Below are positions 24,471 through 59,100 of a stretch of DNA of 64,000 bases, piece after piece. Each line of letters starts with the position of its first letter. The first letter of the stretch is position 1. The stretch is from NCBI RefSeq assembly GCF_037042905.1, contig NC_087252.1:12028001-12092000 (forward strand), read 5' to 3'. The translations under genes and the position numbers were made by a program. The stretch is from Lytechinus pictus (Eukaryota). The notes under the pieces were generated by a model that was not told the origin of the DNA, searched no databases, and was given only the letters and a program-made list of their open reading frames with translations.

Positions 24471-27444
24471 TCAGGAGATGTATCCAGGTTGGCAAGCAAC
24501 GAAGAGAGCCGAAGATGTCGTCTGCATTTGTTGGATGACCAGCAGAGAAGGTAGATCTGGTGTAGCTTTGAAAAAGCCGAGGAAAAAAAGCAAAAAATAT
24601 ATAATTACCTCAATACCTGAATGCTATTCTTTTGTGATTGTTGCTATTTGTATAAGTTTATTTTTTTGGTTTACATGTATACTTGCTATATAATTTCTTA
24701 AAAATTAAAAATGACGAAATATCACCAACTGTTGTTGTTGTTTCTGGTTTATACTGCGCATATCTTTAATCTGTAAATATTGTTGCCATTGACACGACTG
24801 ATATTAGTCTTTGAAAGCAGGCGTGATTCATTTTCAAATGTATAGACGAACGCGAAGCACATTTGAACTTACTGACAATGGAAGTGTTGAAGACCGCAAT
24901 GCCCTCACCGTATCTTGAATTGGCAGTGCAGCGGTAAATACATGGATATTCAGGACGAGGGACTTGAATTGCAAGTTCTGATGAGGTAATGGTTTCTCGT
25001 TCTGATGAATTTTCAGGAAGGGAGATGCTAACAGTGTCGTTTGAAATCAGGGTTTCGTTACAGAGCCATTCAAAATAAATGACGGGAGGATTTGCATCAG
25101 CTCTACATTTTAAAACGAATCTAGCATATCCGCTTGGTTCTATCGTTGGAAGTCTTCGAAAAGTATTAGACACAATGGGATGATCTAAAAGGAAAATAAA
25201 CGATGACACTTGGAAATTAATTAGAACTGATATAAAGACAGGGTGATGAAAAAGTTTAGACTGGGGTTAAAGAGCGAATTCATTTACAAAGGTTACTTGG
25301 AACAGCACTTATTAATTGTCACTGACCCTTAGTAAGGGAGCTAAGCTGTTGGCTCAGTTAATAGTGCCTGCCGGGCCAACGTTCAAGTGGGCATAATGAA
25401 ATTTCTGAGGATCTGTTGCGAACAATGAAAAAGGTATTTTCATGTAAAGAATAATCCGACACATGTCAACAGCATGTCCATCATGTCGTAGTCTCTACTA
25501 TTATAAAACTTATATTGCACTTACACGATATGGTCAAAATCGTACTGTCGTTCACTAAACGAGGAGAGGGTATGTCAGGTTGAACTGCCACGCAGATAAG
25601 ACACTTCCCATGATCGGTTCTGTTGGGTTTAAAGAAAAGTGTGCTCTCAGCATCATACAGATCAGCTGTGTTTTTACTTATCCGCAGGGAGGAGTTGTCA
25701 GTCACGTTCGTTGATCCTAAGTACCAGTGAATGAGGGGGGCCGGGTTTCCATTAAGACCTCTGCATGTGACGTTGGTCTCTTCTCCTTCAAAGATATCAT
25801 CATCTGGGAAAGTTATTGTGATATCATCTGGTGGTCCTTCAAAGAAACATAAAATCTACGATTATCATAGTTAAAGTGAAACTGAAATATTAGATATGGC
25901 ATAAAGTGGAACTCGCCAAAAGTAACTCGATCACATTTGTATTATCAGTTGACGTCAAATCAGCAATAACGAGACGTCAAGTCACTTATTCAAATTGAAC
26001 CCTACAAATTACCCCTTAAAAAACACCAGCAGGTTAGTTGCAATTCCGTCCATTTTGTAGTTACAATAGATAATTCCTACTCAGTAAGCATGATAATTTA
26101 TCATATAGCTTCTACAAGCAGAAAAAAAAAATCGTTTCTCGATAAAGCGTTTAAGAAATAAAAACTCACCAAGAACAACCAGTCTAACCTGCCAGAACTA
26201 AGTCGCCTTCTATAGATGAGTAGCATACGATGTGCATTCCATGGTTCTTTTTATCAGGGTGTATGGTTATGGTACTTTCAGTGTCAAACAAAGTTCCGTC
26301 TAAAACACTGCGAGTCGTTGAAAGGTTTGCGGGAATTTGAGTACCATCACCATCGCCAAATAACCAAAATGTTAGTTCAGTCGCTGGGAATGATCCGATA
26401 CTTTTGCATGTGATTGAAGTCAGTGAATCTTCTTGTACGTTAAGTACGGTTGAATGGGACTGGTTTCCTCCAGTTCGAAAGAGCAGCACATCCCTTGGCA
26501 GAACTTAAAAAAATAAGAAAAGAAAAATAAAATAGTAAAAAACAAAAATAAATTTAAATGGATGAAAAGGGTAAACTATTATTCCATGCGCTAACGAATG
26601 CCAATTCACTACATGGAAAGGTGTTTTCTTTGGATAAATCTCTCTTAACTAACTGATATCCCATATGCAATATAGAGAGCAGTATTTTTTTTTGGAAATA
26701 CATACCCTCAACATTGAGATGAACTGAGCATAGACGTTCATTTTGTAGTTCTGGGTGTGACGTGATGCAGCTAAGAATCTTCCCGTGGTCTTTCCTGGAG
26801 GGTGTGATTGTCATGGCTTTCTGGGAGATGTAAGATCCGTCTTGAATAACGTTAGACTGATCCTGGTGAACAACAGCCACATCATCAGGTATACGCCATT
26901 CCAGTAGTGCAGGAGGCATTGCTCCATATGCTTCACATGTGATGTTGTGTTGATCTCCAGCTATTACAGTCACTGAAAGGTTATTAAAGCAGTAGCGAAT
27001 CCCCGTGTCATCAATAATAACGATCACATTTGGTGGATCTGGTGATAGAAGTAATGAATACACTGATTTTTTTATTGAATGCCTTTGTACTTTTAATTTT
27101 AATAATGTAAGAATAAAATCTTTTAGTTAGATTTTTTTTCATAATAACACAGGCCCTACGTAGAGCCAAACAACGTTCTACGTTCTCAAAACATAATGGT
27201 TTACAAGGATTAAACATTGTAGTGGTATATATCAGCCACCCTTAAGTTTACAAGCGAATGACATTTACAGCTACTTGGATATTGTTTTTAATTTTCATTT
27301 TAATGCTGAACCTGGCTAGAATAGAATCTTTCAGTTAAAAATCGCTATAACGCACATGTATACCTAACGTAGACCCACACCATGTTTGACCAGCTCAAAA
27401 CATTATGCTTTACTAGGGTTGAGCATTTTAGTGGTGGTCGGTTT

Positions 27445-27494
<50 letters not shown>

Positions 27495-28680
27495 CATATT
27501 TATATCAGCCACCGTTCGATAGCAACTGTTAAGTTTACAAAGGGATTGCATTTACGGCTCATTTGGATACTTTGTCATTTCTATTTTTCTGTTGTACCTC
27601 GTTAGGATATATATATTTTTTTTTATAAGGTAGGCCTAACGTAGAACCAATTCATGCTTAACAAAACATAATGCTTCACAAGGATTGCACATTTTAATGG
27701 GGTCGTTTATGATACATGTATATGAGCCACCCTACGATATCAATTTAAGTTTGGAAACAAATTGATACTTTGTAAAATGTTGTCAGGTTATATTATATTT
27801 AGTTTCGCTAGATAAATATATTATAAAGTATGGTTTTCATGTCAATTCGAATGGATAGCTCCGCATTTTTGTCTCAAAATCTATTGCTCATGCCGCTATC
27901 CGTTATCATTTCGGGTGAGATTTTTTACTTGTTAGATATTCCATGAAAACATCTGCTAATAAGCAGATAGGTAAAGAAAAAAGTCTGTCAAACGTAATAT
28001 AAGACAATACAATTGCATAAATCAGCTTTCAATACTTCTTTTTGCGGCGATCAATGTAAAGGCGACCAGTTTGAAAGAAAATACTAGTATTTTGTCCGTA
28101 ATGGTAATAATGAGGGTTTTCCGTGTAGTTTATTTACTTTAATAGAACAATATTGTATGGTTTTGCTGTTTGTTTCTAGGGAAAATAAATACTATACTAT
28201 ACTTTATCAAGGGCCTCTTTTAGCAATATGATAGTATCAATATGGACCATATACATACAAAAAATATACAAAATGAATAAAAATAAGTTTATATACTGCC
28301 ATTTTTGTTAATTAATATATTTTAATGATAATCATAAAGAGTGTCCGAGCCAAAATTTATGAACTTTTGGAGCTATATTAAAAAATTTACCGCGAAATTG
28401 GGATTTTATGCATTAATCAGTATTATTAGTTAGTTAAAAATATATTTAAATAATTGGTAAAACTGAATACAAACAAGCTTAAATACTGGTAGTCATATTT
28501 CAAGTGTGACAGGCAGCACATCAACAAATTCGTATTGCTCACATAATCCTTTTACTTTTTAGCATCTTAATTCGCTACGATAAACTTACCTCCATAATGC
28601 AAATATAATAAAAACTTACTGCTTTGTGAGATGATTACGCCCAGGGATAAAATAAAAGTTGCTTGAATCGAGATGGCCAT
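24471..28680 (-). CDS. Variable cassette 1: signal peptide, 4 Ig exons, FN3 stub (Ig2 frameshifted near its 3' end)
   Basis: Leader 28620-28680 (MAISIQATFILSLGVIISQS); Ig1 26706-27038; Ig2 26170-26503 (334 nt, frameshift); Ig3 25525-25836; Ig4 24873-25184; stub 24471-24565 ending ALFVACQPGYIS*. Confidence 0.8.
27445..27492. repeat. (TA)n microsatellite within a ~270 bp two-copy duplication (~27220-27750)
   Basis: TA run; atatcagccacc..taagtttacaa..catttac.gct recurs at ~27228 and ~27502. Confidence 0.6.
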
Positions 28681-31089: not shown

Positions 31090-34000
31090 CTAGATGATGA
31101 ATCGTGGTTGCCAGGCAACGGAAAGAGATGAAGATTTCGTCTGGTTTTGGTGAATGGTGAACCCAGAAGGTGGATGCGAGATGAAATCTAAAAAATATGA
31201 TGTAAACTGCAAAAATAAACTTAAGACGAAATGTTTATAAGTATCACTAAAATGTTAAAAATCAACACTTTACCATTTTTTGTGATGAGGCATTATTGAA
31301 AGGATAACGTGAATATATAATTTTAAAGCAAATTTTTTTAACTTCTTTACTCATTTTTATTCAGTTTAAAATGAAACATATCAAATTTAATTATTTTACA
31401 TGGGGTAGGAGTCACTAAAAGCCGCAGGCCTAGGCCTAAAAAGGATGATTCTTCTTGAAATGTATAAGAATATCAAAACAACATCAATTATGTAATAAAA
31501 AAGGTACACAACGTATATTGATCACATCACTTTATTTGTTATTTGATTATGAGAAAAAAAGAGATAACTGTAAGCTTACACAAATAAAGGGAATTCAATA
31601 CTGCACTTCCCGAGCCGTATTCTGATACAGCGGTGCAGTTGTAAACATAATGATACATGATGAGTGGGTTTTGAATCGCAAGTACGCTGGACCTTAGCGT
31701 TGCATCTTCATATAGAGTCTCGGTGAGATTGTAGTAATTGGGGTCGTTGGACACTACAGTTTCGTTGCAAAGCCAAACGAAGGTAATGGCAGGAGGATTG
31801 GCGTCCGCTTCACATATCAACACGAGCTCAGTAGTCCCACTTGCTTTGTTTGATGTAAGATGTCGAGCAGTGATTGACACAGCAGGATGATCTACATCAC
31901 AGAGACAAAATACCAAATAAAAAATAAATTAATATTGAATGGGAGAAGCATAAAGATAGGACAGCAATAGATAATGGAAAGACATTTATTTCGAAAGACG
32001 CAAAACAGAAAACAAACATTGTCATATTATCTTGTAAATAGAAGATGGTAGAGCCATTGTGGTCATAAATTGTCTCACGCGACTTTTATTCAGCATGTTC
32101 AGTCTGTTGTGAATTATGTAAAAACAAAAATCATAGAAACTCAAATTTTCTTTAAATTATTTTAAACACCTTCTACCAAACATTAAAAAAAGAAAACAAA
32201 ATAGCCAACGAGAAAAACATGTAGACAGACGAGATAAGTTGGAATTTTAAAAGTTTCCCCATCTCCCCAACCTGCCAAGGAGTCTTATCAAGTGCATGAC
32301 CGAAATCAGTACTTACATGTTATATTCAGAACCAAGCTTTGATTCACCGAACGAGCTGGGAGTGTTGTAGTTTGAACTGCCAGGCAGAGAAGACTTTTCC
32401 CATGGTCAAACCTCGTCGGTATTAGAGTCAGAGTGCTTTCAGCATCATATCGACCAGCTTTATTTTCACTTATGTTCAAAGATGAATCCGTTGTAAGATT
32501 TCTTGATCCGATGTACCAATGTATATGCGGTGCAGGGTATCCATTAGCAGCTTTGCAGGTTACATTTATTTCTGTGCCGTCATATAAGTCCAGAGGAAAA
32601 TTTATTTTGATGCCTTCTGGTGCGCCTTTGAACAAAACGTTAAAAAATAGTCCTAAATCTTTGTACTTAACTAAATAATGAGATTTTGGTACAAATAGAC
32701 ATTAACATATTTTATAGCTTTTATAAGGGGGAAAACTCTTTGCATACTTAGAAAACGTGAAATGCTCATTATCAGCGATGACGACGTAGCCCTTTTCAGC
32801 TTGGAAACTTGTAAGAAATTAAAAAACAATACACACATATTTACAATATACTTTATCAAGATGATGGTTAACAGTTAACACCTGATACATTATATTGAAC
32901 AACATTTGTATGGATTAAAATGTGGCTTAAGAAATAACCAACCAAAGGGAAGAAAAAAAACTCACCGTAAACGACCACTTTGGCAAACACCCATTCCACT
33001 AGAGATTCTTCAAGTAATGCAAAGCAATTAATGTACTTCCCATGATGTACAATATTTGGATGTATGATTACAGTACCCTCGGTGTCGAACAAAGCATCGT
33101 CTAAAATACTTGTTTTGCTTGAGATATTTGGAATAATTATTTCGGCGAGACCATTGCCACTTTCTAACTGAAAGGTTAGTTCGGTTGCTGGGAATGACCC
33201 AATACTTTTACATGTGATTGAAGTCGGTGAATCATCTTGAACGTAAAAGACTGTCGATTGTGACTGGTTACTTCCAGTTAGAAAGAGGAGCACACTCATA
33301 GGAAGAACTTCAAAGGAAAACATGAAGAGCGAGTCAGGGATAAAGAGAGATAGAGAGGGGGTGAGAAACAAAATGATTATAAAGAATATCTAGCAAATGT
33401 CAAATGTCATGAATGACCTTTTTTAGGGATACATACTGCATGAATATATTTTTCTGTAAACGTATAATGAAAGTAACATGGAAAACTAAAGTATTTAGTA
33501 TTTATATTTAAAAGGAAAGGAATTGATTCGTTTAACAGTAATACTGCTCGAAATTCACAGGTTTATATAAGTAAAACAATTACAAGCTTGGCAACCATAC
33601 ATAGTACCTACCATGAACATTCAGATGAACTGAGCATTGAAGGCTCTTAGATAGTTGTGGATGTGATGCGATGCAGGTGAGGATCTTTCCGTGGTCATTC
33701 CTGGAAAGCGTGATTCTCACAGCCTTCTGAGAGATGTAAAAGCTGTCTTGGATGACATCAGACTGATCCTGATGAACAACTGCCATATCATCAGGTAGAC
33801 ACCATTCCAATACTGCAGGGGGCATTGCTTCATATGCTTCGCATGTGATGTCATGTTGTTGACCAGCTATTACCGTTAGAGAGAGGTTGTTTATAAAGTG
33901 GTTAAAGATGCCCTCTCCATCAGTGATATAGAGCCGATTTGGTGGAGCTTGGGATGAAAATAAAATGCGTCCAATATCAAAGTCAATGTTTTTTTTATTT

Positions 34001-34537: not shown

Positions 34538-34556
34538 GAAAGCGGGCGCTCTTTCG
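34538..34556 (-). promoter_or_regulatory. Conserved cassette upstream element
   Basis: GAAAGCGGGCGCTCTTTCG ~215 bp upstream of the ATG at 34322. Confidence 0.7.
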
Positions 34557-35675: not shown

Positions 35676-38600
35676 TTACTTTCGGAAAGATGTTTTTGTG
35701 TCGTTTTCGATGATTAAACCTGATTTCCAGGCAACGAAAAGAGATGAAGATTTCATCTGGTTTTGATGGACGATGATCCCAGAAGGTGCATCCGGGATTA
35801 AATCTGTAGAAAAAGAAGAAAATATGATATAAACTTAAAAAAAAAAAAAAAAAAAAAAAAAACATAAAAGTACACGTTTGTAAAAAAATATATATATTAC
35901 TGTTTTTAATATTTTCATGTATTAGTCATTATTGATATGATAACGTGGTAATTATATTTTGAAAGAAAAATTAAAAACGCATTTATGCCTTAAAATGAAA
36001 CCTATTAAATTCAACTATTTTACACTGTGGAGGAGTAAATAAAAGCCAGAGGATTAACACGGGTGATTCTTATTGCATTATTAAAAAAAAACGAACACAA
36101 CATCAATAATATGCAGTAATGTTTCTATCACATCACTTCATTTGTCATTTGATTATAGAAAAGTATAATAACCGTCAACGTACACAAATCAACAGTATTG
36201 AAGATCACACTTCCTGAGCCGTATTCTGATTTGGCGGTACATTTATAGACAAAATTATACTTGGAGAGTGGGTTTTGAATCACAAGTACGCTGGACGTTA
36301 TCGTTGCATCTATAGTCTGAGGTAGTGCTTTGTTATTGGAGTCGTTGGACACCACAGTTTCGTTGCATAGCCATTCGAAGGTATTGACAGGAGGATTGGC
36401 GTCCGCTTCACATATCAACGCGAGCTCAGTAGTCCCACTTGCTTTGTTTGATGTAAGATGTCGAGCAGTAATTGACACAACGGGATGATCTACACCACAG
36501 AGACAAAAATATTCGCTAGAAGTTAGATTAAAATTGGAGATGTGTGGAGTGTGATTTTGGTTCATGTGTTTGTCTCGTCATTATCTTAATCAGTTTGTTG
36601 TGAATGTAAAATGAAATCCAAGAGGCTTAAGCTTTACAATGTCTACTAATCATGTAGCATACAAGCAGGAGAACAAATTAGCAAACGAGGCAACGATGAA
36701 ATTATGGAGGCAGACAAGATTATTTGTATTTCAAAATGGTTCCCTATCTACATGCTATATCTAATCAGTAATCTTATCAAATATATTACGGAAATCAGTA
36801 CTCACACTTTATATTCAGAACTAAGCTTTGATTCACCGAACGACCTGGGAGTGTCGTAGGTTGAACTGCCAGGCAGAGAAGACGTTCCCCGTGGTCAAAA
36901 CTGGTTGGTATTAGAGTTAGCGTGCTTTCAGCATCATATCGAACAGCTTTATTTTCACTTATGTTTAAGGATGACTCCTCTGTAAGATTTCTTGATCCGA
37001 TATACCAATGGATATGCGGTGCTGGGTATCCATTAACAGCTTTGCAGGTTACATTTATTTCTATGCCATCGTACAGGTCCATAGGGGAAGTAATTTTGAT
37101 GCCTTCTGGTGGGCCTTTGTACGAAACGTAAAAAGAATAGTAATATATAGATCAATTCCGTAAACTGAATAATATGTGTCAAAAATAGCCCACATAACGT
37201 ATTCTTTTGTTTGTAGCAGGGAGGAACACGTCCTACATCCTTAGATTGTGTTAAATCCTCAATATCAGCGATGACGACGTGGCCCTTTTCAGCTTGGAAT
37301 ATTGTAAATAATAAAAAACAACAAAACTATTTAGAATATACATATCATATAAATGGATGCATTCAACATCACATAACACCTAACATGGCAAGAGATCGAA
37401 CAATATTTGCATGAGTTACAGATGAAGTTTAAAAAACTACAAATCAAAAAAGGAGGAAAAAGAACTCACCGTAAACAATCACTTTGACGAACATAAATCC
37501 AACTATGTGTTTTTCAAGTGATGCGTAGCAATAAATGTACTTCCCATGACGCTCAATATTTGGGTGAATGGTTATGGTACCCTCGGTGTCGAACAACTTA
37601 TCGTCTAAAACACTCCTTTTGCTTGAGATATTTGCGCGAAGGGGGATATTGTCAGCTCGACCAGTACCCCCTACTAACTGAAATGATAGTTCGGTCGCTG
37701 GGAATGACCCGATAATTTTACAAGTGATTGAAGTCGGTGTATCTTCTTGAACGTTAAGGACTCTGGAATGGGACTGGTTTCCTCCAATTCGAAAGAGCAG
37801 CATATCCCTTGGCAGAACTTAAAATTAAAACAAAAGGAAACATTTTGAGTGAGAGAGATGGAGAACTAAGGAGGGGGGGGGGGGTATTATGAATGGTATC
37901 AAATTTACACTTTGGTAAAATGAAATTGAGGAGACTGAAGAGATATGTTTTATTACATACTAGATATATTTTCTTGTCAATTCTGCCGACATGAAAGTTG
38001 GGGTTGCCACGCAGTCAATCTTAGCTTAGCTTGCCAATTATACGTATATCATTTATGTATTTTCTTTTTTAATGTGTTCATGAAAAAGTGTTGCAGAAAC
38101 CAATGAATGAATGATTGAAATGCACAGATAGCGTAAATCCATCTGCGAAGGAATAACATTGCTTTAAAATTGTGTAAATGTTGAATATTACAGTGGCGGC
38201 AATAAAAGGCTCGCTAAAGACTGACACTGACATTTTGAGACAGAAATGACCAGTTTGACATACACACCATGAACATTGAGATGAACTGAGCGTAGACGTT
38301 CATTTTGTAGTTGTGGATGTGATGCAATGCAGCTAAGAATCTTTCCGTGGTCTTTCCTAGAGGGTGTGATTGTCACAGCTTTACGAGAGATATAAGATCC
38401 GTCTTCAATAACATCAGACTGATCCTGATGAACAACAGCCATATCATCTGGTACATGCCATTCCAATGCTGAAGGAGGATTTGCTCCGTATGCTTCACAT
38501 GTGATATCATGTTGTCTGCCAGCTTTTACCGTTACAGAGAGGTTGTTAAAGTAATAACGTACCCCCTTTCCATCAATGATGTAGATCTGAGTGGGTGGAG

Positions 38601-41523: not shown

Positions 41524-41670
41524 NNNNNNNNNNNNNNNNNNNNNNNNNNNNNNNNNNNNNNNNNNNNNNNNNNNNNNNNNNNNNNNNNNNNNNNNNNNNN
41601 NNNNNNNNNNNNNNNNNNNNNNNNNNNNNNNNNNNNNNNNNNNNNNNNNNNNNNNNNNNNNNNNNNNNNN
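41524..41670. other. Assembly gap (147 N)
   Basis: Run of n. Confidence 1.
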
Positions 41671-41937: not shown

Positions 41938-44900
41938 TCATTTTCCGATGATGAACTCATGTTTCCAGGCAACGAAAAGAGATGAAGATCTCGTCTGGTG
42001 TTGGTGGATGATGAACCCAGAAGGTGCATTTGGAATTAAATCTGTAAAACCAAAAATAGATGAGAACTGCAAAAAAATATATATATATAACGAGATGAAT
42101 TTTCAAAGATTAACAAAATGTTAAATCAATACAATACTTTCTGTAATATGACATTATTGATAATATAACGTATATATTTCATGTTGAAGAAAAATTAGTT
42201 AATTTATTTACTCCTTATCATCTATTTAGTTTAAAGTGAAACATATCAAATTCAAGTAGTTTACAATGTTGAGGAGACATAAGCCACAGGCCTAAAAAAT
42301 GATGATTCTCCATGTATGCAAATCAAAGCGAAATCAATTAAGTAATACAAATTACACAAAGTATTTTGAAATATTTAAATATTTTTAATTTGTTATTCAA
42401 TTATTAGAAAATGGGGGGGGGGGGGGGAATAGTTGTAAGCTTACACAGATAAAGGGAATCGAATACCGCACTTCCCGAGCCATATTCTGATACAGCGGTG
42501 CATTTATAAACAGAATAATAATTGGAGAGTGGGTTTTGAATCCCAAGTACACTGGTCGTTAGTGTTGCGTTTTCCGATATTGTCTCGTGGAGTCTGTAGT
42601 TATTGGTGTCCTTTGACACTACAGTTTCGTTGCAAAGCCAAACGAAGGTAGTGACAAGAGGATTAGCGTCCGCTTTACATATCAACACGGGCTCTGTAGT
42701 CCCACTTGCTTTCTTCGATGTAAGACGCCGAACAGTAATTGACACAACGGGAGCATCTAGACCAAAGAGACAAAATGCAATTTGCTAGTAATGAATATGA
42801 AATAAAAGAAGCATACAGATCATAAGAAAAGGACAGAAATCGATAATGATTTTTTTTTCTTAGAAAGAGACAAGACGGAAAACAAAACATTGGCTAATTA
42901 CTTTGTAAAAATAAGGTTGCAGTGTCATTTTATATATAATTTGTCTCGTGGCGACGTTTATAGTTTTCTTTACAATTTTTAAAACATCTACTAAACATGC
43001 AAGCAGTCTTATCGAAGCTACTACCAAAACCAGAACTTACATGTTACGTTCAGAACCAAGCTTTCATTCACCGAACGAGCTTGGAATGTTGCAGGTTGAA
43101 TTGCCTGGCAGAGAAGTTGCTTCCCATTGTCAAATCTCGTCGGTATTAGAGTAAGCGTGCTTTCAGCATCATATCTACCAGCCGGATTTTCACTTATGTT
43201 TAAATACGAATCCTCTGTAAGATTTTTTGATCCAATGTACCAATCAATTAACGGTGCGGGGGATCCATTAACAGCTTTGCAGGATATATTTATTTCTATG
43301 TCGTCGTACAGATTCCCAAGGAAAGTCATTTTGATGCCTCCTGGCGGGCCTTTGAATGAAACGTAAACAACGAATTCAATGCCGTAAAAGAAGGAAATAA
43401 GTTTGTGTTCAATATAAACCCACTTAATGTATTTTGTAATTAATAAAAGGGGTCGAAAACACATCTTGCGAACTTTTATTTTCTTATATTATGTGAAATC
43501 CTCAATGCCAGCGATGACGACGTGGCCCTTTTTAGTAATGACAATTGTAAGATATCCTAAACAATACTATTATTTTGTTTAAGCATGTAAATGATCATGC
43601 TTAACATCGGATAACACCGATAAAAAGGGAAAATATTTCATCAATATTGTGTATGAATAAGGAATGCAGTTTTTAAAATTGCAAACCTAAAGGGGTGAAG
43701 AAGAACTCACCGTAAACGATTACGTTGGCATACACCAATTCCACTATAGATTCTTCAAGCGATGCGAAGCATTTAATGTACTGTCCATGATGCACAATAT
43801 TTAAGTGTAAGATTACAGTACCTTCGGTGTCAAACAGAGCATCGTCCAAAATGCTTCTTTCGCTTGAGATATTTGGAATAATTCTTTCGCCGAGACCATT
43901 GCCACTTTCTAACTGAAAGGATAGTTCAGTTGCTGGGAATGACCCAATACTTCTACATGTGATTGAAGTCGGTGAATCTTCTTGGACGTATATGAGTCTT
44001 GACTGGGACTGGCTACCTCCAGTTGAAAAGAGCAGCACACTCATAGGAAGAACTTCAAATGAAAAGAAAAAGAGCGAGGGATAAAGAGAGATAAAGACAG
44101 GGGAAAAGGGAAGGAATGACAATAAAAATTGTGTTGAATATCATTAACAGATGCTAAATGGCATGAAGAATTGGATGAATTTTAAAAGTGACACGCCGTT
44201 TGCTTTTATTTTTTGGTATACATGTACGTATAATATTAACATCGGGTGATAAATAAATATATTTGCAAGAAAAAGAAATCGATTGGTCTAAGAGTAATAT
44301 TGTTCAATGTAAAGAGGTTTGTTTTAAATGGACGCTGACAAGCTGGGAGTAAATGAGGCAGCCATCGGTGTACATAACCTAGAGACAGATATATTTATAC
44401 AAAATACCTACCATGTACATTCATATTTACTGTGCATTGAAGGTTTTCTGATAGTTCTTGATGTGATGCGATGCAGCTAAGAATCTTTCCGTGGTTATCC
44501 CTCGAGGGTGTTATTGTCACGGCTTTCTGAGAGATGTAAAAGCTGTCTTGGATATCATCAGACTGATCCTGATGAACAACTGCCATATCATCAGGTAAAC
44601 GCCATTCCAATACTGCAGGGGGCATTGCTCCATATGCTTCACATGTGATGTCTTGTTGTTGGTCAGCTATTACGGTTAGAGAGATGTTGTTTGAGTAGTA
44701 AATGGTGCCCTCTCCATCAATGACATAGAGCCAAGTGGGTGGAGCTTGCGATGAAAAACATAATACATTCAAGTATTAGAGGCATCATTCCTCATTTGTC
44801 TAAATCATTTTACGTGAAAGCATACATTTCTTAGATATAGAATTATGTAATTAGATGCCCAAGTAGAATATTCGGAGCTCCGCTAAAGTAACTATCATCC

Positions 44901-45728: not shown

Positions 45729-48700
45729 TTAATCATGTATGAGGATCTGTTTTAACGACAACGTGCATATGGCGAATATAGCGATGTTCTCACACCCTAA
45801 TGTTGATCCTGGTTGCCAGGCAACGAAAAGAGATGAAGATCTCGTCTGATTTCGGTGCATGATGAACCCATATGGCGGATTCGGGATAAAATCTGTAAAA
45901 CAGAAGAAAAATTGTAAAACAAGCAAAACGGGATACGTTAATAACAAAGATGAAATATTAAATCAATACATCAATATTTTTGTGCTAAGACGATATTGGT
46001 AGGATTAATTGATTATTTGATTTTGAAACAAAATGTATTAATTTATTTATTATTTTTCTTTTTTTCGATTTGAAATACAACATATCAAATTCAACTATTT
46101 TACGATATGGAGGGCCCATTAAAAGCCACATGTCTAACAATGTTTTCTTTTTGTTTGGTATAAGACCAAAAACATCAAATATATGTATGTAAAACCACAC
46201 AAAGTATTTAGAATTATTTTGATCACATCACTTTATTTGTTATTGATTATTTCAGAAGTAAATTGATAATAGTCAGCTTACACAAATAAAGGGAATTGAA
46301 TTCTGCACTTCTCGAGCCGTATTCTGATACAGCGGTGCATTTATAAACACAATGATATTTGGAGAGTGGGTTTTGAATCGCAAGTACGCTCGATGCTAGT
46401 GTTGCATCTTCATATATAGTCTCGGTGAGTCTGTAGTTGGTGTCGTTTAACACTACAGTTTCGTTGCATAGCCAATCGAAGGTATTGACAGGAGGATTGG
46501 CGTCCGCTTTACATGTCAACACGAGCTTAGTAGTCCCACTTGCTATGGTTGATGTAAGACGTCGAGCAGTAATCATCACAACGGGATGATCTACATCACA
46601 GACACAAAATAGAAATTTGATAGAAATTAATATGAAATAAGAAAGTATAATAATCATGGGGACAGAATAAAGATAGATGATAAAATCAAGTTCATGTACG
46701 TAAAAAGAAGCAAAACACAAGACAAAACATTGTCCAATAACTTTCTGAAAAGAAGGTTGTAGTGTCATTTTGGATAAAGTTTTCTCGTTTCTACATTTAC
46801 AGTGTGTGAACGTAAAAAGAAATCCAAATGGGTCAGGTTTTCTTTAGAAATATTGTTTAAGACATAACAGGCGGACAGCACAAGCAGAAATAAATATCTC
46901 AAATAATCAAAGAGTCAACGAGGAAAGCGTGTAGACAGACAAGATCATTTGCAATTCAAACGGGTTAACTATATATATTCAACCAGTCCACTAGTCTTAT
47001 TAAATGCATTTAAAATAATCACCACTTACATGTTATGTTCAGAACCAAGCTTTGATTCATCGAAGGAGCTGGGAGTGTTGTATGTTGAACTGCTTCACAT
47101 AGAAGACTTTTCCCATGATCAAACCTCGTCGGTCTTAGAGTTAGGACGCTTTCAGTGTCATATCGACCAGCTTTATTTTCACTTGTGTTTAAAGATGAAT
47201 CCTCTGTAAGATTTCTTGATCCGATGAACCAATGGATATACGGTGCTGGGTAGCCATTAGTAGCTTTGCAGGTTACATTGATTGCTATGCCATCGTACAG
47301 GTCCATAGGGAAAGTAATGTTGATGCCTTCTGGTGGGCCTTTGAACGAAACGTAAAAAGAATAGTCATATATAGATCAATGTCGTAAACTTAATAATATG
47401 TGTCAAACATTACTTACATAACGTATCATTTTGTTTGTAGCAGGGAGGAAAGACACCTTACATCCCAAGAATGCGTTACATCCTCAATATCAGCGATGTG
47501 GCCCTTTGCAGCTTGGAATATTGTAAATAAAAAACACAACTATTTAGAATATACTTTATCATATACATGGTGGCGGTCAACAACATATAACACCTAGCAT
47601 TGCAAGAGATCGAACAACATTTGCATGACTTAAAAAAGTTTTAAAAAACTACCAATCCCAAAAAAAGGGAAGAGGAAAAAAAAAGTAGAAGAACTCACCG
47701 TAAACGACCACTTTTGCGAACATAAATCCAACTATGTGTTTCTCAAGTGATGCGTAGCAATGAATGTTCTTCCCATGACGCTCAATATTTGGGTGAATGG
47801 TTATAGTACCCTCGGTGTCGAACAACTTATCGTCTAAAACACTCATTTTGCTTGAGATATTTGCGCGAAGGGAGATATTGTCAGCTTGACCAGTAACCCC
47901 TACTAACTGAAATGACAGTTTGGTCGCTGGAAATGACCCAATACTTTTACAAGTGATTGAAGTCGGTGTATCTTCTTGAACGTTAAGGACTGTTGAATGG
48001 GACTGGTTTCCTCCAGTTCGAAAGATCACCACATTCCTTGGCAGAACTTAAAAATAGAACAAAATGAGACATTTTGAGTGAGTGAGAGCGATAGAGAGCC
48101 AATGAGGGGGGGGGGTATTGTGGATGGTATCGAATTTACACTTTGGTAAAATGATATTTAGGAGACTGAATGCTTTAGTACATGGATATATGTTGTCGAC
48201 CATGTATCATCCCATGCATCATTGACTTCCTCACTGGTCGTAACCAGTGCGTCCGCTACCAAGGTGTCATGTCAGACATTACTCCTATGAGCGCAGGTGT
48301 ACCACAAGGTACACCGGGCTTGGCCCGGTGCTCTTTCTAGTTCTTATCAACGATGCCCTAGCTATCATCATCCAAAATGGAGTTATGGAAATATGTAGAT
48401 GATATGACACTAGGTGAAGTGAAAACGAATGGTGCAGCCAGTGAGGTACAAGACACTCTTGATGAGCTAAATGTATGGTGTAATACAAATAAAATGAACT
48501 TGAATGCCAGTAAATGTCAAGTGATGAGAATGGACTTTGGGAAAAATCCACTCCCAATGCACTGAATGTTGAAATAGGCACCAGACCCTGAATGAAGTAG
48601 ACGTGATGAAAATACTTGGTATCCTTGTCCAGTCAGACCTAAAATGGAATGACCACATTAGTTCAATGATAGCTAAGGCTAACAGGCGAATTCACATGTT

Positions 48701-50486: not shown

Positions 50487-50563
<77 letters not shown>

Positions 50564-52257: not shown

Positions 52258-55200
52258 TCATTTTCCGATGATGAACTCTTGTTTCCAGGCAACGAAAAGA
52301 GATGAAGATCTCGTCTGGTGTTGGTGGATGATGAACCCAGAAGGTGCATTTGGAATCAAATCTGTAAAAAAAAAAAATAGATGAGAACTGCAAAAATATA
52401 TATATATATATAACGAGATGAATTTTTAAAGATTAACAAAATGTTAAATCAATACAATACTTTCTGTAATATGACATTATTGAAAATATAACGTATATAT
52501 TTCATGTTGAAGCAAAATTAGTTAAAGTATTTTTTCCTTATCATCTATTTAGTTTAAAATGAAACATATCAAATTCAAGTAGTTTACAATGATGAGGAGA
52601 CATTATAAGCCACAGGCCTAAATAATGATGATTCTCCATGTATGCAAATCAATGCGAAATCAATTAAGTAATACAAATTACACAAAGTATTTTGAAATAT
52701 TTAAATATTTTTAATTTGGTATTCGATTATTAGAAAATGGGGGGAAATAGTTGTAAGCTTACACAGATAAAGGGAATCGAATACCGCACTTCCCGAGCCA
52801 TAGTCTGATACAGCGGTGCATTTATAAACAGAATAATAATTGGAGAGTGGGTTTTGAATCCCAAGTACACTGGACGTTAGTGTTGCGTTTTCCGATATTG
52901 TCTCGTGGAGTCTGTAGTTATTGGTGTCCTTGGATACTACAGTTTCGTTGCAAAACCAAACGAAAGTAGTGACAAGAGGATTAGCGTCCGCTTTACATAT
53001 CAACACGAGCTCCGTAGTCCCATTTGCTTTGCTCGATGTACGACGTCGGACAGTAATTGACACAACGGGAGCATCTAGATCAGAGACAAAATGCAATTTG
53101 CTAGTAATGAACATGAATTAAAAGAAGCATACGGATCATAAGAAAAGGACATAAATCGATAATGATTTTTTTTTTCTTAGAAAGAGGCAAGACGGACAAC
53201 AAAACGTTGTCTAATTACTTTGTAAAAAAAAAGGTTGCAGTGTCATTTTATACATAATTTGTCTCATGGCGACGTTTATAGTTTCTTTACAATTTTTAAA
53301 ACATCTACTAAACATGCGAGCAGGAAGAGCAGATAAAAAATACTTTAAAAGCCAATGGGTCAACTAGGAAAATATGATTAAGGTCGATTGCATTAAAAAA
53401 AAAAAGGTTCCCTATCTATCCGACCAGCCAAGCAGTCTTATCGGAGCTATTACCAAAACCAGAACTTACACGTTACGTTCAGAACCAAGCTTTGATTCAG
53501 CGAACGAGCTTGGAATGTTGTCGGTTGAAGTGCCCGACAGAGAAGTTGTTTTCCATTGTCAAATCTCGTCGGTATTAGAGTAAGCGTGCTTTCAGCATCA
53601 TATCGAGCAGCTGTATTTTCACTTATGTTTAAAGATGAATCCTCTGTAAGATTTTTTGATCCAATGTACCAATGAATTAACGGTGCGGGATATCCATTAA
53701 CAGCTTTGCAGGATATATTTGTTTCTATGTCGTCGTACAGATCCCCAAGAAAAGTCATTTTGATGCCTCTTGGCGGGCCTTTGAACGAAACGTAAAAAAC
53801 GATATACATAATCCAATGCCGTAAAAGTAGGAAATAAGTTCGTGTTCAATATGAACCCGCTTAATGTATTTTGTAATTAATAGAAGGGGTCGAAAACACA
53901 TCCTGCAAACGTTCATTTTCTTAGATTATGTGAAATCCCCAAAGCCATCGATGACGACGTAGTCCTTTTTAGCAATGAAAATTGTAAGAAATCCTAAACA
54001 ATACTATTTAGAATATTTTTTTCAGCATGCAAATGAGCATGGTTAACATCGGATAACACATAAAAAGGGATACTATTTCATCAACATTGTGCCTAAATAA
54101 GGAATGCAGTTTCAACAATTGCAAACCTAAAGGGGTGAAGAAGAACTCACCGTAAACGATTACTTTGGCATACACCAATTCCACTACAGATCCTTCAAGC
54201 GATGCGAAGCATTTAATGTACTGTCCATGATGCACAGTATTTAAGTGTAAGATTACAGTACCCTCGGTGTCAAACAGAGCATCGTCCAAAATGCTTCTTT
54301 CGCTTGAGATATTTGGAAGAATTCTTTCGCCGAGACCATTGCCACTTTCTAACTGAAAGGATAGTTCAGTCGCTGGGAATGACCCAATACTTCTACATGT
54401 GATTGAAGTCGGTGAATCTTCTTGAACGTATATCAGTCTTGACTGGGAATGGCTACCTCCAGTTGAAAAGAGCAGCACACTCATAGGAAGAACTTCAAAG
54501 GAAAAGGGAAAGAGCGAGGGATAAAGGGAGATAAAGACAGGGGAAAAGGGAAGGAATGACAATAACAATTGTGTTGAATATCATTAAAAGATGCTAAATG
54601 GCATGAAGAATTGGATGAATTTTAAAAGAGACGCGCCGTTTGCTTTGATTTTTTGGTATACGTAGAATATTAACATCGGGTGATAAATATATTTGCAAGA
54701 AAAAGAAATGGATTGGTCTAAGAGTAATATTGCTCAATGTACAGAGGTTTGTGTAAAATGGACGATGACAAGCTTGGAGTAAATGAGGCAGCCATCGGTA
54801 TACATAACCTAAAGACAGATATATTCATACAAAATACCTACCATGTACATTCATATTTACTGTGTATTGAAGGTTTTCTGATAGTTCTTGATGTGATGCG
54901 ATGCAGCTAAGAATCTTTCCGTGGTTATCCCTTGAGGGTGTTATTGTCACGGCTTTCTGAGAGATGTAAAAGCTGTCTTGGATATTATCAGACTGATCCT
55001 GATGAACAACTGCCATATCATCAGGTAAACGCCATTCCAATACTGCAGTCGGCCTTGCTCCATATGCTTCACATGTGATGTCTTGTTGTTGGTCAGCTAT
55101 TACGGTTAGAGAGATGTTTTTTGAGTAGTAAATGGTGCCCTTTCCATCAATGATATAGAGCCAAGTGGGTGGAGCTTGCGATGAAAAATATAATGCATTC

Positions 55201-55550: not shown

Positions 55551-55752
55551 TCAGCCTGTTCAGTGATCATACAGTAGGCAATGCGAAGACGTTCTGTATG
55601 TTCCGACAGACAGAACATTCTAACAAAAAGACATGAAATGTTTGGACAATTAACAATGGCACTTACTTACATTCCTTCCTTCTTACTTGGATTCGGTTTC
55701 GCAAACTGTCTTAAATAGCCACCAATATAACATGTAACAAAAGTGTTAGATC

Positions 55753-55770
55753 GAAAGCGGGCGCTCTTTC
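55753..55770 (-). promoter_or_regulatory. Conserved cassette upstream element
   Basis: GAAAGCGGGCGCTCTTTC ~200 bp upstream of the ATG at 55550. Confidence 0.7.
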
Positions 55771-56161
55771 ATCAGTGGGCCTGAGTATAATTTGAATATC
55801 GTTATGCAAGGGTATCAAAATAGTATGCGGTATATATTTTCATAATGGATTTTATGCGAGTGTAGAAATCTGTTCAAATTGAATACGAAAAAGAACAAGC
55901 CTGTTTTTTCATTGAACTCACATTCAAACAACGAGCAAAATTTTTTTTATATCGAATGTAGTTTTATTTTTGTAAAACTAAGCTCAAACGCGATAAAAGT
56001 AGGGGAAAGCGATTTTCATGATTGAAGTGTGGAAATTGATACTCCTAGCTATCTTTCACACTGCTCCGTTTCTTGCAGTTATATTCTTGTCAAAGTGATC
56101 GTTTCAGTTCGTTCTAATTTTTAACAATCTCTGTTTTGTTCTTGGAACTATTTACAAAAGT

Positions 56162-59100
56162 TTAATCATGTATGAGGATCTGTTTTAACGACAACGTGCA
56201 TATGGCGAATGTAGCGATGTTCTCATACCCTAATGTTGATCCTGGTTGCCAGGAAACGAAAAGAGATGAAGATCTCGTCTGATTTTGGTGCATGATGAAC
56301 CCAGATGGCGGATTCGGGATAAAATCTGTAAAACAGAAGAAACATTGTAAAAACAAAACATAACGGGATACGTTAATAACAAAGATGAAATATAAAATCA
56401 ATACATCAATATTTATGTGCTAAGACGATATTGGTAGGATTAAATGATTATTTGATTTTGAAACAAAATGTATTAATTAATTTATTATTTTTCTTTATTC
56501 GAATTGAAATACAACATATCAAATTCAACTATTTTACGATATGGAGGGTCCATTAAAAGCCACATGTCTAACAATGTTTTATTTTTGTTTGGTATAAGAC
56601 GAAAAACATCAAATATATGTATGTAAAACCACACAAAGTATGTATAATTATTTTGATCACATCACTTTATTTGTTATTGATTATTTCAAAAGTAAATGAT
56701 AATAGCTTACACAAATAAAGGGAACTGGATTCTGCACTTCTCGAGCCGTATTCTGATACAGCGGTGCATTTATAAACACAATGATATTTGGAGAGTGGGT
56801 TTTGAATCGCAAGTACGCTCGATGCTAGTGTTGCATCTTCATATAGAGTCTCGGTGAGTCTGTAGTTGGTGTCGTTTGACACTACAGTTTCGTGGCATAG
56901 CCAATCGACGGTATTGACAGGAGGATTGGCGTCCGCTTTACACGTCAACACGAGCTTAGTAGTCCCACTTGCTATGTTTGATGCAAGACGTCGAGCAGTA
57001 ATTGTCACAACGGGATGATCTACATCACAGACACAAAATAAAAAAATTATAGAAATGGATAAGAAAAGTATAATAATCATGGGGACGGGATAAAGATAGA
57101 TGATAAAATCAAGTTCATGTACGTAAAAAGAAGCAAAACACAAAACAAAACATTGTCCAATAACTTTCTGAAAAGAAGGATGCAGTGTCATTTTGGATAA
57201 AGTTTGTCTCGTTTCTACATTTACAGTGTGTGAACGTAAAAAGAAATCCAAATGGGTCACGTTTTCTTTAGAAATATTGTTTAACACATAACAAGCGGAC
57301 AGCAGAAGCAGAAAAAAGTATCTTAAATAATCAAAGAGTCAACGAGGAAAGCGTGTAGACAGACAAGATTATCTGCAATTCAAACGGGTTAACTATATAT
57401 ATTCCCCCAGTCCACTAGTCTTATTTAATGCATTAAAAAAAATCACCACTTACATGTTATGTTCAGAACCAAGCTTTGATTCACCGAACGAGCTGGGAGT
57501 GTTGTAGGTTGAACTGCTTCGCATAGAAGACTTTTCCCATGATCAAACCTCGTCGGTCTTAGAGTTAGGACGCTTTCAGCATCATATCGACCAGCTTTAT
57601 TTTCACTAATGTTTAAAGATGAATCCTCTGTATGATTTCTTGATCCGATGAACCAATGGATATGCGGTGCAGGGTATCCATTAACAGCTTTGCAGGTTAC
57701 ATTTATCTCTATACCTTCGTAGAGGTCCGCTGGATAAGTAATTTTGATACCTTCTGGTGGGCCTTTTAACGAATCGTAAAAAGGGTATGTATAAATCAAT
57801 ACCGTAAATTCAATAATACTATTTTGGTTCAAACGGTACCTACTTGGTGTATTCTGTAATTTGTAGAAGGGGTGGAAATAAAATCCATCTTACAAACCTT
57901 CGTTTCCTTACATTAAGTGAAATCCCCAATATCAGCGATGACGAACTGAATATCAGTAAGACCCCCCCCCCCTCCATACACATCTATTTAGAATATTATA
58001 CTTTGTCATGTACATGTAAATTATGGCGGTTAAGACGAGATACATGTAACTTCTAATAAGCCAATAGATTGTAAGATATTTTGTATGACAAAAAAACGCC
58101 TTTTGAAAAACAAACCACCAACCAAAAGGGGGAAAACTCACCGTAAACAATCACTTTGGTGGACATAAATCCGACTATGTGTTGTTGAAATGATGCGTAG
58201 CAATAAACGTACTTCTCATGATGCTCAATATTTAGGTGCATGGTAATAGCTCCCTCGGTGTCGAACAACGTATCGTCTAAAGTACTCCTTTTGCTGGAGA
58301 TATTTACACGAATAGGGATCCTGTCAGCAAGACCAGTGTCACCTTCTATCTGAAATGATAGTTCGGTCGCTGGGAATGACCCAATACTTTTGCAAGTAAT
58401 TGAAGTCGGTGAATCTTCTTGAACGTATATGTCTATTGACTGTGACTGTTTATCTCCAGTTGGAAAGAGCAGCAGCTTTATAGGAGGTACTTCAAAGGAA
58501 AAGAGAAGAGCAAGTCAGCGAGTTAGGGTAAGGCAGAGAGGAAATGAGAGAAGGAATGATTTTAAAGAATTTAGTTCACTTAACACATGCTAAATAGAAT
58601 AAATGATCAGAATATTTTGAAGTCGGCTTGTTTAACAGTAATATTGCTTTACATCTATAAGTTTGTTTTGTTTGATCAATAAAAGGCTGGACAACAAAAA
58701 TGAGAATGCATGTCATCGGGACATAACCAACAGATAGAAATATTCATGAAAATACTTACCCTGAACAGTAAGGTGAACAGAGCATTGAAGAATCCTTTGT
58801 AGTTCTGGGTGTAATGCGACGCAGCTCAAAATCTTCCCTTGGTCAATTCTCGAGGATGTGATTGTAACCGCCTTCCTGGAGATGTAAAAACTGTCTTTAA
58901 TGACATCCGACTGTTCCTGATGAACAACGGCCACATCCTCTGGTATACGCCATTCCAATTTTGCAGGAGGCAATGCCCGCGTTGCTATACATGATATGTT
59001 GTACGGCTCTCCAGCTATTACCGTTAAAGAGTAGTTGTTGAAGAAGCGGATGCCCTCTCCATCAATGATGTAGATCCAAGTGGGTTGAGCTTGCGATGAA

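What the first reader, a model, noticed from the sequence alone, without database searches (positions are those of the whole stretch)
24471..56325. Every cassette ends in a truncated FN3 stub cut at the same point and unusually similar to the constant FN3 exon
Seen: stubs at 24471-24565, 31090-31187, 35676-35803, 41938-42041, 45729-45892, 52258-52361 and 56162-56325. Each keeps a splice acceptor and ~27 in-frame codons (IPxPPSGxIxHQNQTxSSSLFVAW[QK]P), then homology collapses and a stop follows. By hand count stub 2 matches the constant exon at 65 of 80 nt, whereas cassette Ig3 is only about one-third identical in protein to proximal Ig-c. Stub 3 continues ENDTKTSFRK, which looks like the constant TNDTK..TKSSFRL after a deletion between ACAAAG repeats. 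Inference: the stubs are maintained. They could be alternative terminal exons making secreted 4-Ig forms (a membrane/secreted switch per cassette), homology arms that let a cassette fuse to the constant FN3 by recombination or gene conversion, or competing acceptors that regulate long-range splicing.
Basis: partly seen in the sequence, partly recalled or inferred. Interest (0 to 1): 0.78.

Follow-up and report, generated by a model that had tools for sequence, protein, structure and literature searches.

The report
Relic FN3 pieces ending secreted-Ig genes
The seven "stubs" are real leftovers of a fibronectin-type-III exon, but each one is the last coding exon of its own small sea-urchin gene for a secreted four-Ig protein, not a spare end of one big cassette gene, so the finding is genuine but fairly ordinary.

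Summary
All seven stubs sit at the stated coordinates on the minus strand. Each has an AG acceptor in phase 1, about 27 FN3-like codons and then a stop. Stub 2 matches the neighbouring full FN3 exon at exactly 65 of 80 nt.

The reading as cassettes of one gene does not hold. Cassettes A-F each splice into an intact 487-508 aa protein: signal peptide, four Ig domains and a stub tail. Cassette G is frameshifted.

The genome is Lytechinus pictus. Its RefSeq model LOC129266796 maps exactly onto cassette B and uses stub 6 as its last coding exon. L. variegatus models of related genes end in stubs of the same classes.

The "constant" FN3 exon belongs to a separate full-length neighbour gene. In a tree the stubs form one clade apart from the slowly evolving full FN3 exons, so I see no sign of gene conversion.

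The stubs are mildly constrained. They change less than their flanks in 10 of 10 pairs, carry no indels, and vary more at third codon positions (p = 0.02).

No RNA run was listed, so use in transcripts rests on gene models alone.

The parts
56162..56325 (-). Stub 7, the last coding exon of unit A (164 nt including the stop). It has an internal donor, TTAGG|GTATGAG, after codon 33.
   Evidence: The homologous donor is used in L. variegatus model P0119.
52258..52361 (-). Stub 6, the last coding exon of unit B (101 nt plus TGA).
   Evidence: RefSeq protein P0121 (LOC129266796) maps exactly onto it with GT-AG introns.
45729..45892 (-). Stub 5, the last coding exon of unit C. It is the same type as stub 7.
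41938..42041 (-). Stub 4, the last coding exon of unit D. It is a recent duplicate of stub 6 (2 of 88 nt differ).
35676..35803 (-). Stub 3, the last coding exon of unit E. Its tail reads ...WKSGLIIENDTKTSFRK*.
31090..31187 (-). Stub 2, the last coding exon of unit F.
24471..24565 (-). Stub 1 of unit G. It is the most degenerate stub (W changed to C, AAAG acceptor). Unit G is frameshifted in Ig2 and is probably a pseudogene.
   Evidence: It has a long branch in the tree.
60071..60137 (-). Leader exon of unit A (ATG, signal peptide, donor GTAAGT, phase 1). Homologous leaders lie at 55484-55550 (B), 50821-50881 (C), 45039-45105 (D), 38911-38974 (E), 34256-34322 (F) and 28620-28680 (G).
52763..55174 (-). 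The four Ig exons of unit B: 55174-54842, 54492-54151, 53778-53470 and 53074-52763. The other units have the same layout.
   Evidence: Pfam finds C2-set_2 and Ig_3 domains.
10620..10924 (-). Full FN3 exon of the separate neighbouring membrane gene.
   Evidence: Pfam fn3 match. The orthologous L. variegatus model is P0174.
5524..15875 (-). Neighbouring full-length gene: V exon, IgA-D, an IgE-like exon that the models skip, FN3, stalk, TM, and a cytoplasmic tail with YMDL/YMDA/YMNT/YMDM motifs.
41524..41670 (.). Assembly gap in the spacer 3' of stub 4, at the edge of the 10.4-kb duplicated block.

Best explanation
The window holds a tandem array of seven small genes next to one full-length membrane gene. 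All belong to a large 'nephrin-like / syg-2-like' Ig-superfamily cluster of the sea urchin Lytechinus pictus.

Each small gene has six exons:
- a leader exon with the ATG and a signal peptide;
- four Ig exons;
- a last coding exon, which is the 5' quarter of an FN3 exon.

The origin is inferred. An ancestral family member with four Ig domains, FN3, TM and a cytoplasmic tail was partly duplicated or truncated inside its FN3 exon. The relic kept its acceptor site and reading frame, ran into a nearby stop codon, and became the 3' terminal exon. That turned a membrane receptor into a secreted four-Ig protein with a short tail covering FN3 strands A and B.

The unit then multiplied by unequal crossing-over. 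The latest event copied a 10.4-kb two-gene block. This history explains why every copy ends at the same point.

The stubs resemble the neighbour's FN3 exon because full FN3 exons in this family hardly change. The stubs have drifted away from them only moderately, under weak purifying selection.

In some copies the stub also carries a usable donor site. Gene models then join it to the next gene's first Ig exon, usually out of frame.

What is shown:
- the gene structure and the intact ORFs;
- the exact match of a RefSeq model to cassette B;
- the single clade of stubs;
- the mild constraint.

What is inferred:
- secretion of the proteins;
- polyadenylation after the stub;
- the ancestral truncation event.
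For: 1. Leader exons. A conserved leader exon, M(M)xSISxQvvLxLcLgIxISQS followed by GTAAGT in phase 1, lies 300-400 nt upstream of Ig1 in all seven units.

2. Intact genes. Joining the six exons at conserved GT-AG sites gives intact CDSs of 487-508 aa for units A-F. Only G is frameshifted.

3. Gene models.
- RefSeq protein P0121 (L. pictus LOC129266796) lies on a contig of the same length as this one. It maps exactly onto unit B and ends in stub 6.
- L. variegatus models P0120, P0127, P0118, P0001, P0116 and P0135 end in homologous stubs.
- The stop after ...FIIGK is at the same codon in both species, although the codon itself differs: TAA against TGA.

4. Single origin. In the tree all 18 stubs of this type, including five from L. 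variegatus, form one clade (support 86/94). They are separate from the full FN3 exons, which have very short branches.

5. Constraint.
- Stub mismatch is lower than flank mismatch in 10 of 10 independent pairs.
- Pooled, the stubs show 8.4% mismatch. The flanks show 10.6% when only columns away from gaps are counted, and 13.1% over all columns (Fisher p = 4e-6 for the latter).
- The stubs have 0 indel events where 21.5 would be expected at the intron rate.
- Mean pairwise diversity by codon position is 0.171, 0.151 and 0.257 (permutation p = 0.02).
- All 18 L. pictus and 5 L. variegatus stubs keep an AG acceptor.
- In one L. pictus/L. variegatus alignment the Ig exons showed about 9% mismatch against about 15% in the introns, a similar relative rate.

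6. Ancestral form. Full-length relatives with the same four Ig types joined directly to a complete FN3 exist in the protein library. P0132 and P0151 are examples, though their source species is not given.

7. Family-wide FN3 conservation. Between two divergent paralogues, P0132 and P0150, FN3, stalk and tail are 80-90% identical while the Ig domains are 25-35% identical.
Against: There is no transcript evidence. No RNA run was listed for this stretch, so use of the stubs rests on NCBI gene models whose RNA support I could not see.

Pairwise pN/pS in the stub is 0.83-0.91, which is not distinguishable from 1. With the stricter flank measure, the substitution deficit is only marginal (p = 0.06).

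The missing indels may partly reflect AT-rich, repeat-rich introns that are more prone to indels.

AATAAA motifs lie about 180-225 nt after the stop in several stubs. They occur at roughly the background density of this AT-rich DNA, 2.1 per kb.

The sequence 3' of the stub is not alignable between stub subtypes, although the upstream intron is. A single clean breakpoint does not by itself predict this.

The AlphaFold model gave no information on the tail (pLDDT below 50).
Confidence: 0.72

Rival explanations
1. The stubs are passive duplication debris. They are inherited with each copy, not selected, and appear in gene models only because a gene predictor needs somewhere to end.
For: Pairwise pN/pS is 0.83-0.91 and not significant. 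The clean-flank substitution contrast is only p = 0.06. In one L. pictus/L. variegatus pair, stub 6 is 85% identical, like its introns at 81-86%. No RNA run was listed.
Against: Stub mismatch is below flank mismatch in 10 of 10 pairs. The stubs have 0 indels against 21.5 expected. Third codon positions are 1.6 times more variable (p = 0.02). Every stub keeps an AG acceptor. The stop position is conserved between species through a TGA/TAA change. The one unit with a broken ORF (G) also has the most degenerate stub.
Confidence: 0.15
2. The units are alternative 5' cassettes with their own promoters, like clustered protocadherins or chelicerate sDscam. They can splice either to their stub (secreted form) or, skipping it, to the downstream FN3/TM/tail exons (membrane form).
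For: Each unit has its own first exon. All exon junctions are phase 1, so Ig4 to the full FN3 exon would stay in frame. All units and the membrane gene lie on the same strand. Some models show read-through splicing from a stub to the next unit.
Against: None of the models I examined (units of this type and the full-length neighbours' orthologues in both Lytechinus species) joins such a unit to FN3/TM exons; the searches were length-limited and word-indexed, so this is not exhaustive. The downstream gene has its own V and IgA-D exons. The stub acceptors have stronger pyrimidine tracts (13-17 of 20) than the full FN3 acceptor (11 of 20), and they lie only about 400 nt from Ig4 against 13-48 kb.
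Confidence: 0.08
3. The stubs are homology arms or conversion partners. They let a cassette recombine with, or be converted by, the full FN3 exon, either somatically or in the germ line.
For: About 80% identity over roughly 85 nt between each stub and the full exon. The array clearly evolves by unequal crossing-over.
Against: The stubs form their own clade with shared derived characters, including a 3-nt insertion at the acceptor and SSSLF in place of SSTLF. None groups with the FN3 exon of its own locus. Eighty-five nucleotides at 80% identity is a poor substrate for recombination; that point rests on my own knowledge. The units carry their own leader exons and splice sites (A-F also intact ORFs), unlike donor pseudogene arrays.
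Confidence: 0.02

Closest known systems
Soluble paralogues made by partial tandem duplication of Ig-superfamily receptor genes, such as secreted PSG proteins within the CEACAM family or soluble LILRA3 among the LILR receptors (from my own knowledge).
   Same: A tandem array lies next to membrane-bound relatives. The copies keep the signal peptide and Ig domains but lose the TM and tail. The Ig domains diverge quickly. The array grows by unequal crossing-over.
   Different: Here the terminal coding exon is a recognisable fragment of the next domain's exon (FN3 strands A and B). That fragment has been kept through many rounds of duplication and in two species. The function in sea urchins is unknown.
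Chelicerate sDscam and vertebrate clustered protocadherins: tandem 5' cassettes with their own promoters spliced to shared constant exons (PMC4835542, abstract as listed).
   Same: Tandemly repeated multi-exon Ig units, each with its own first exon, lie upstream on the same strand as exons for FN3, TM and tail.
   Different: Each unit here has its own terminating exon. The downstream gene has its own N-terminal Ig exons. None of the models I examined joins a unit to the downstream exons.
Nephrin / Kirrel / SYG-2 family of Ig-superfamily adhesion receptors.
   Same: CD80-like C2-set Ig domains followed by one FN3, a TM segment and a tyrosine-motif tail in the full-length neighbour. RefSeq names these proteins nephrin-like, syg-2-like and kin of IRRE-like.
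   Different: The array genes have only four Ig domains and no complete FN3, TM or tail. The family is expanded to more than 80 Ig3-type exons over 640 kb, which is unlike the single-copy wiring receptors.

Membership tests
Alternative 5' cassette locus (sDscam / clustered protocadherin type) | Each variable cassette has its own first exon or promoter. | tested here: met
   An ATG and signal-peptide leader exon lies before every unit. Promoter activity was not tested.
Alternative 5' cassette locus (sDscam / clustered protocadherin type) | Cassettes lack a terminating exon of their own and splice to shared constant exons. | tested here: not met
   Every unit ends in a stub with a stop codon. 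RefSeq models end there. No model joins a unit to FN3/TM exons. Direct RNA evidence was not available.
Mutually exclusive exon cluster (Dscam1 type) | Variant exons are internal, lack start codons, and are flanked by shared exons on both sides. | tested here: not met
   Each unit starts with its own ATG leader and ends with its own stop.
Gene-conversion donor array (chicken pseudo-V type) | Donor copies lack a leader, promoter and splice signals or have broken ORFs. The acceptor gene shows conversion tracts from the donors. | tested here: not met
   Six of seven units are complete, spliceable ORFs. The stubs and the full FN3 exons are separate clades with no mixing by locus.
Nephrin/Kirrel/SYG-2-like IgSF | Several C2-set (CD80-like) Ig domains. 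| tested here: met
   Pfam PF08205 C2-set_2 matches, E = 7e-9 to 2e-13, in cassette Ig1 and Ig3 and in neighbour IgA and IgC.
Nephrin/Kirrel/SYG-2-like IgSF | A membrane-proximal FN3 (nephrin), a TM segment and a cytoplasmic tyrosine-motif tail. | tested here: inconclusive
   Met by the neighbouring full-length gene. Not met by the array genes, which keep only 27-54 codons of FN3. Orthology to nephrin or SYG-2 proper was not tested; the names are automatic.
Truncated secreted paralogue of a receptor | Signal peptide present, no TM segment or GPI signal, and a stop before the membrane-anchor exons. | tested here: met
   The predicted proteins of units A-F have an N-terminal hydrophobic leader and end 32-54 residues after Ig4 with no long hydrophobic stretch. 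Secretion itself was not tested.

The most novel reading that the evidence does not exclude
The stub may be a regulated decision point rather than just an end. Either the transcript terminates there, giving a secreted four-Ig protein, or the stub's internal donor is used and the transcript reads through into the next unit's Ig1 exon.

Read-through would usually be out of frame, which could mean NMD-coupled control of neighbouring units. In some copies it is in frame, as in L. pictus model P0117, which would give chimeric multi-unit proteins.

That would make the array a 'beads on a string' system in which neighbouring genes are combined or silenced by splicing.
Probability: 0.15. Interest if true: 0.6.

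Novelty: new member of a known kind. Interest (0 to 1): 0.35.

Why it matters
The result corrects a tempting but wrong reading. This is not one Dscam-like or protocadherin-like diversity gene. It is an array of separate genes.

It also gives a clean, dated example of how a receptor family produces soluble relatives. A duplication or truncation inside a domain exon left a fragment that kept its splice acceptor and reading frame. That fragment was then carried along as the terminal exon through many rounds of duplication and across two species.

The wider cluster may deserve attention in its own right. It spans 640 kb, holds dozens of Ig units that evolve moderately fast (pN/pS 0.2-0.8), includes secreted forms next to receptors with tyrosine-motif tails, and is uncharacterised. 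It is a candidate recognition or decoy system in sea urchins.

Tried and rejected
1. RNA evidence. The look-up of sequencing runs listed no RNA run for 30900-36900. Read laying therefore could not be used, and expression remains untested.

2. Fetching the rest of the cluster.

3. Ancestral-state counting of synonymous and non-synonymous changes. The machine does not offer ancestral sequences. I did not try another route and used codon-position diversity instead.

4. AlphaFold2 model of P0121 with a 15-sequence alignment. Ig1-3 are moderately confident, but Ig4 and the stub tail have pLDDT below 50, so nothing can be said about the tail's structure.

5. A consistent donor site at the point where homology ends. 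Rejected, because only some subtypes have one.

6. A conserved poly(A) signal. AATAAA lies about 180-225 nt after the stop in stubs 2, 4, 5, 6 and 7, but at the background density of this AT-rich DNA. It is compatible with the explanation but not diagnostic.

7. Homology of the stub 3' parts to the rest of the FN3 exon. Not above shuffled controls, apart from 11 nt in stub 3.

8. A V-domain exon inside the array. None was found; the only V exon in the window belongs to the neighbouring gene.

9. A search for Lytechinus models joining units of this type to FN3/TM exons. None was found, but the word-indexed search is not exhaustive.

10. Literature search. It found no paper on this cluster.

11. 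Earlier findings of this scan. Nothing bears on this place.

Full report
**What is in the window**

The window is G000:C8:12028001-12092000 of an 812-Mb assembly. RefSeq proteins of Lytechinus pictus sit on a contig of exactly this contig's length, 42,376,555 bp. One of them maps without a mismatch onto the window. The genome is therefore L. pictus.

All relevant genes are on the minus strand. At the low-coordinate end lies a full-length Ig-superfamily gene with these exons:
- a V exon at about 15520-15875;
- IgA-D at 14611-11933;
- an IgE-like exon at 11447-11115;
- FN3 at 10924-10620;
- a stalk exon, a TM exon and a cytoplasmic exon with YMDL/YMDA/YMNT/YMDM motifs.

Its L. variegatus orthologue is the 936-aa RefSeq model P0174.

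Upstream lie a LINE element, a tandem repeat, and then seven repeats of four Ig exons, which I call G to A from proximal to distal. Their Ig exons match IgA-D of the neighbour at only 25-39% aa identity.

**Checking the observation**

Each follows a pyrimidine tract and an AG, and each starts in phase 1.

Stub 2 matches the full FN3 exon at 65 of 80 nt. blastn identities to that exon are 74-81%.

Past about nt 96 of the exon, similarity to the rest of FN3 does not exceed shuffled controls. The one exception is an 11-nt match in stub 3.

The assembly gap at 41524-41670 is 268 nt 3' of the stub-4 stop, in a spacer and outside every exon. It sits at the edge of a 10.4-kb duplicated block. The right side is colinear with its paralogue, but the left side has no paralogous match, so continuity across it is unknown.

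A conserved leader exon lies 300-400 nt upstream of every Ig1 exon. It carries an ATG, a signal peptide of the form M(M)xSISxQvvLxLcLgIxISQS, and a strong GTAAGT donor in phase 1.

Exon boundaries are conserved GT-AG sites in all units. Joining leader, Ig1-4 and stub gives intact proteins of 487-508 aa for units A-F. Unit G has a frameshift in Ig2.

The units are therefore gene-like, not internal cassettes.

**Independent support from annotation**

A search with the Ig4 exon found L. variegatus 'nephrin-like isoform X2' (P0001, 495 aa). It consists of a signal peptide, four Ig domains and a tail...YFIPNPPSDFIIHRNQTRSSSLFVAWQPGSTLG....

A second search returned many such models from both Lytechinus species:
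- L. pictus LOC129266796 (P0121, 488 aa) maps exactly onto unit B. Its last coding exon is stub 6, at 52361-52261 plus TGA.
- L. variegatus models P0120, P0127, P0118 and P0135 end in homologous stubs. The stop after ...FIIGK falls at the same codon in both species, as TAA in one and TGA in the other.
- Other stub classes in the cluster are also annotated as terminal exons, for example P0178 and P0149.
- One S. purpuratus model (P0158) ends ...RIPDPPYEFIVDQNQTRSSTLFVTWQPGIANGLQ. This hints that the arrangement is older than the genus, but I could not check its locus.

Some isoforms use the stub as an internal exon. In L. variegatus P0119 the stub is a 97-nt exon with donor TTAGG|GTATGAG, spliced to the next gene's Ig1 acceptor. 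The junction is out of frame and a stop follows 8 codons later. The same donor is present in stubs 5 and 7.

L. pictus model P0117 joins another stub in frame to the next unit's Ig1.

I could not see what RNA evidence underlies these models, and no RNA run was listed for this stretch.

**Are the stubs maintained?**

I compared ten phylogenetically independent pairs, made up of recent paralogues and L. pictus/L. variegatus counterparts.

- Substitutions: the first 88 nt of the stub had fewer mismatches than 600 nt of flank in all ten pairs. Pooled, the stubs showed 8.4% mismatch against 13.1% in the flanks (Fisher p = 4e-6). When only flank columns more than 8 nt from a gap were counted, the flank figure fell to 10.6% (p = 0.06).
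- Indels: the stubs had none, where 21.5 events would be expected at the flank rate. AT-rich introns are probably more indel-prone, so this overstates the case.
- Pairwise pN/pS: 0.83-0.91, not significant.
- Codon positions: across the 18 stubs of this type, mean pairwise diversity at positions 1, 2 and 3 is 0.171, 0.151 and 0.257 (permutation p = 0.02). This is the signature of selection on the encoded peptide in the annotated frame.
- Acceptors: every stub keeps its AG.
- Comparison with real coding exons: in one interspecies alignment the Ig exons showed about 9% mismatch and the introns about 15%. The stubs therefore evolve at roughly the relative rate of the family's coding exons, whose own pN/pS is 0.2-0.8.
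- The broken unit: G, the only unit with a disrupted ORF, has the most degenerate stub, with W changed to C and a long tree branch.

Taken together the constraint is real but weak. That fits a short C-terminal tail and a required splice acceptor.

**Why all stubs end at the same point and resemble the neighbour's FN3**

In a maximum-likelihood tree of the first ~99 nt (3 intron bases plus the first 96 nt of the exon), all window-type stubs form one clade (support 86/94). The clade includes the stubs at 11.91-11.92 Mb and 12.09-12.10 Mb, the one on contig C16, and the five from L. variegatus. It is separate from the full FN3 exons, whose branches are very short.

Most of the stubs (the stub 2-7 type) also share derived characters: a 3-nt insertion at the acceptor and SSSLF in place of SSTLF. 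The common end point is therefore inherited from one ancestral truncated exon.

L. variegatus stubs nest beside their L. pictus counterparts, so the truncated form predates the split of the two species.

The stubs do not group with the FN3 exon of their own locus, so there is no sign of conversion from it.

Elsewhere in the cluster, 3-Ig and 4-Ig units end in stubs of other lengths. Two further stub classes attach to the full-exon group in the tree instead of joining this clade. Truncation inside FN3 has therefore happened more than once.

Full-length relatives with the same four Ig types joined directly to a complete FN3, stalk and tail exist. P0132 and P0151 are examples. They show what the ancestor probably looked like.

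In the models of the neighbour's relatives, IgD also splices directly to FN3 (P0174 and P0177). The units are therefore colinear with IgA-D plus FN3, and the 'missing' fifth Ig needs no explanation.

Between two divergent paralogues (P0132 and P0150), the Ig domains are 25-35% identical while FN3, stalk and tail are 80-90% identical. This family-wide contrast explains why a stub looks 'too similar' to the neighbour's FN3.

One fact does not fit neatly. The sequence 3' of the stub is not alignable between stub subtypes, although the upstream intron is. The shared end of homology may therefore partly be a boundary of constraint and not a single clean breakpoint.

**Array dynamics**

Window 41678-48031 and 51996-58474 are 89-94% identical. 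This is a recent duplication of a two-gene block.

Synonymous divergence differs from exon to exon within a pair of units, so the units are recombinant mosaics.

L. variegatus has a similar duplicated block.

The cluster spans C8:11.70-12.34 Mb on one strand. It holds at least seven full FN3 exons, more than 80 Ig3-type exons, and many V exons, some with built-in signal peptides.

**Verdict**

The best mechanism is that each stub is the terminal coding exon of an independent gene for a secreted four-Ig protein. The stub is a relic of a truncated FN3 exon that was propagated by tandem duplication.

The membrane/secreted switch on a shared constant region is unsupported. The recombination-arm idea is contradicted by the tree.

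This is a new example of a known kind of event. It is already implicit in RefSeq annotation, although the FN3 origin of the terminal exon appears not to have been described.

Noticed in passing
window 15711-15726 (minus strand, V exon of the neighbouring gene): The V exon reads in two frames. Against L. variegatus P0174 (...CQPVVLNPTKY...) the window seems to carry an extra one or two bases in a TG run, which breaks the frame. This could be an assembly error, an allele or a real disruption. The L. variegatus model also starts at an internal Met, so the gene's N-terminus is unresolved.
   Followed up: partly
window 26170-26503 (minus strand, Ig2 exon of unit G): The exon is 334 nt where its paralogues have 342 or 348. 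The frameshift creates a TAG (…DLVLAG*), so unit G looks like a pseudogene in this assembly.
   Followed up: partly
window 11115-11447 (minus strand): An open, I-set-like fifth Ig exon lies between IgD and FN3. It is skipped in the models of the neighbour's relatives (P0174, P0177), which join IgD directly to FN3. It could be an alternative exon or a decaying one.
   Followed up: no
window 17357-20388 (minus strand): A LINE-type retroelement with endonuclease and reverse-transcriptase ORFs (Pfam Exo_endo_phos_2, RVT_1) lies between the array and the neighbouring gene.
   Followed up: partly
window 22780-24300: Tandem repeat of a unit of about 480 nt (86% identical copies) just downstream of stub 1.
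   Followed up: no
window 59487-59873 (minus strand): An ORF with a GIY-YIG nuclease motif (weak Pfam hit), possibly from a Penelope-like element, lies between the leader exon and the Ig1 exon of unit A.
   Followed up: no
window 48047-50104: The intron between Ig1 and Ig2 of unit C is about 2.06 kb where the other units have about 350 nt. An insertion of low-complexity sequence seems likely.
   Followed up: no
L052:9217-10403 (L. variegatus CM031022.1): RefSeq isoform P0119 joins the 97-nt stub exon to the next gene's Ig1 acceptor, out of frame. This is a conjoined, read-through transcript model between neighbouring array genes.
   Followed up: yes
G000:C8:11.70-12.34 Mb: The window is part of a 640-kb single-strand cluster. 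It has at least seven full-length genes, more than 80 Ig3-type exons, 3-Ig and 4-Ig units ending in FN3 stubs of several lengths, and V exons every ~5 kb between 12.10 and 12.28 Mb. In the 11.70-11.90 Mb part, some V exons carry their own signal peptide.
   Followed up: partly
window 5524-5994 (minus strand): The cytoplasmic exon of the neighbouring gene carries repeated YMxx motifs (YMDL, YMDA, YMNT, YMDM). These resemble SH2-docking sites of the PI3K/Grb2 type, which suggests a signalling receptor.
   Followed up: no
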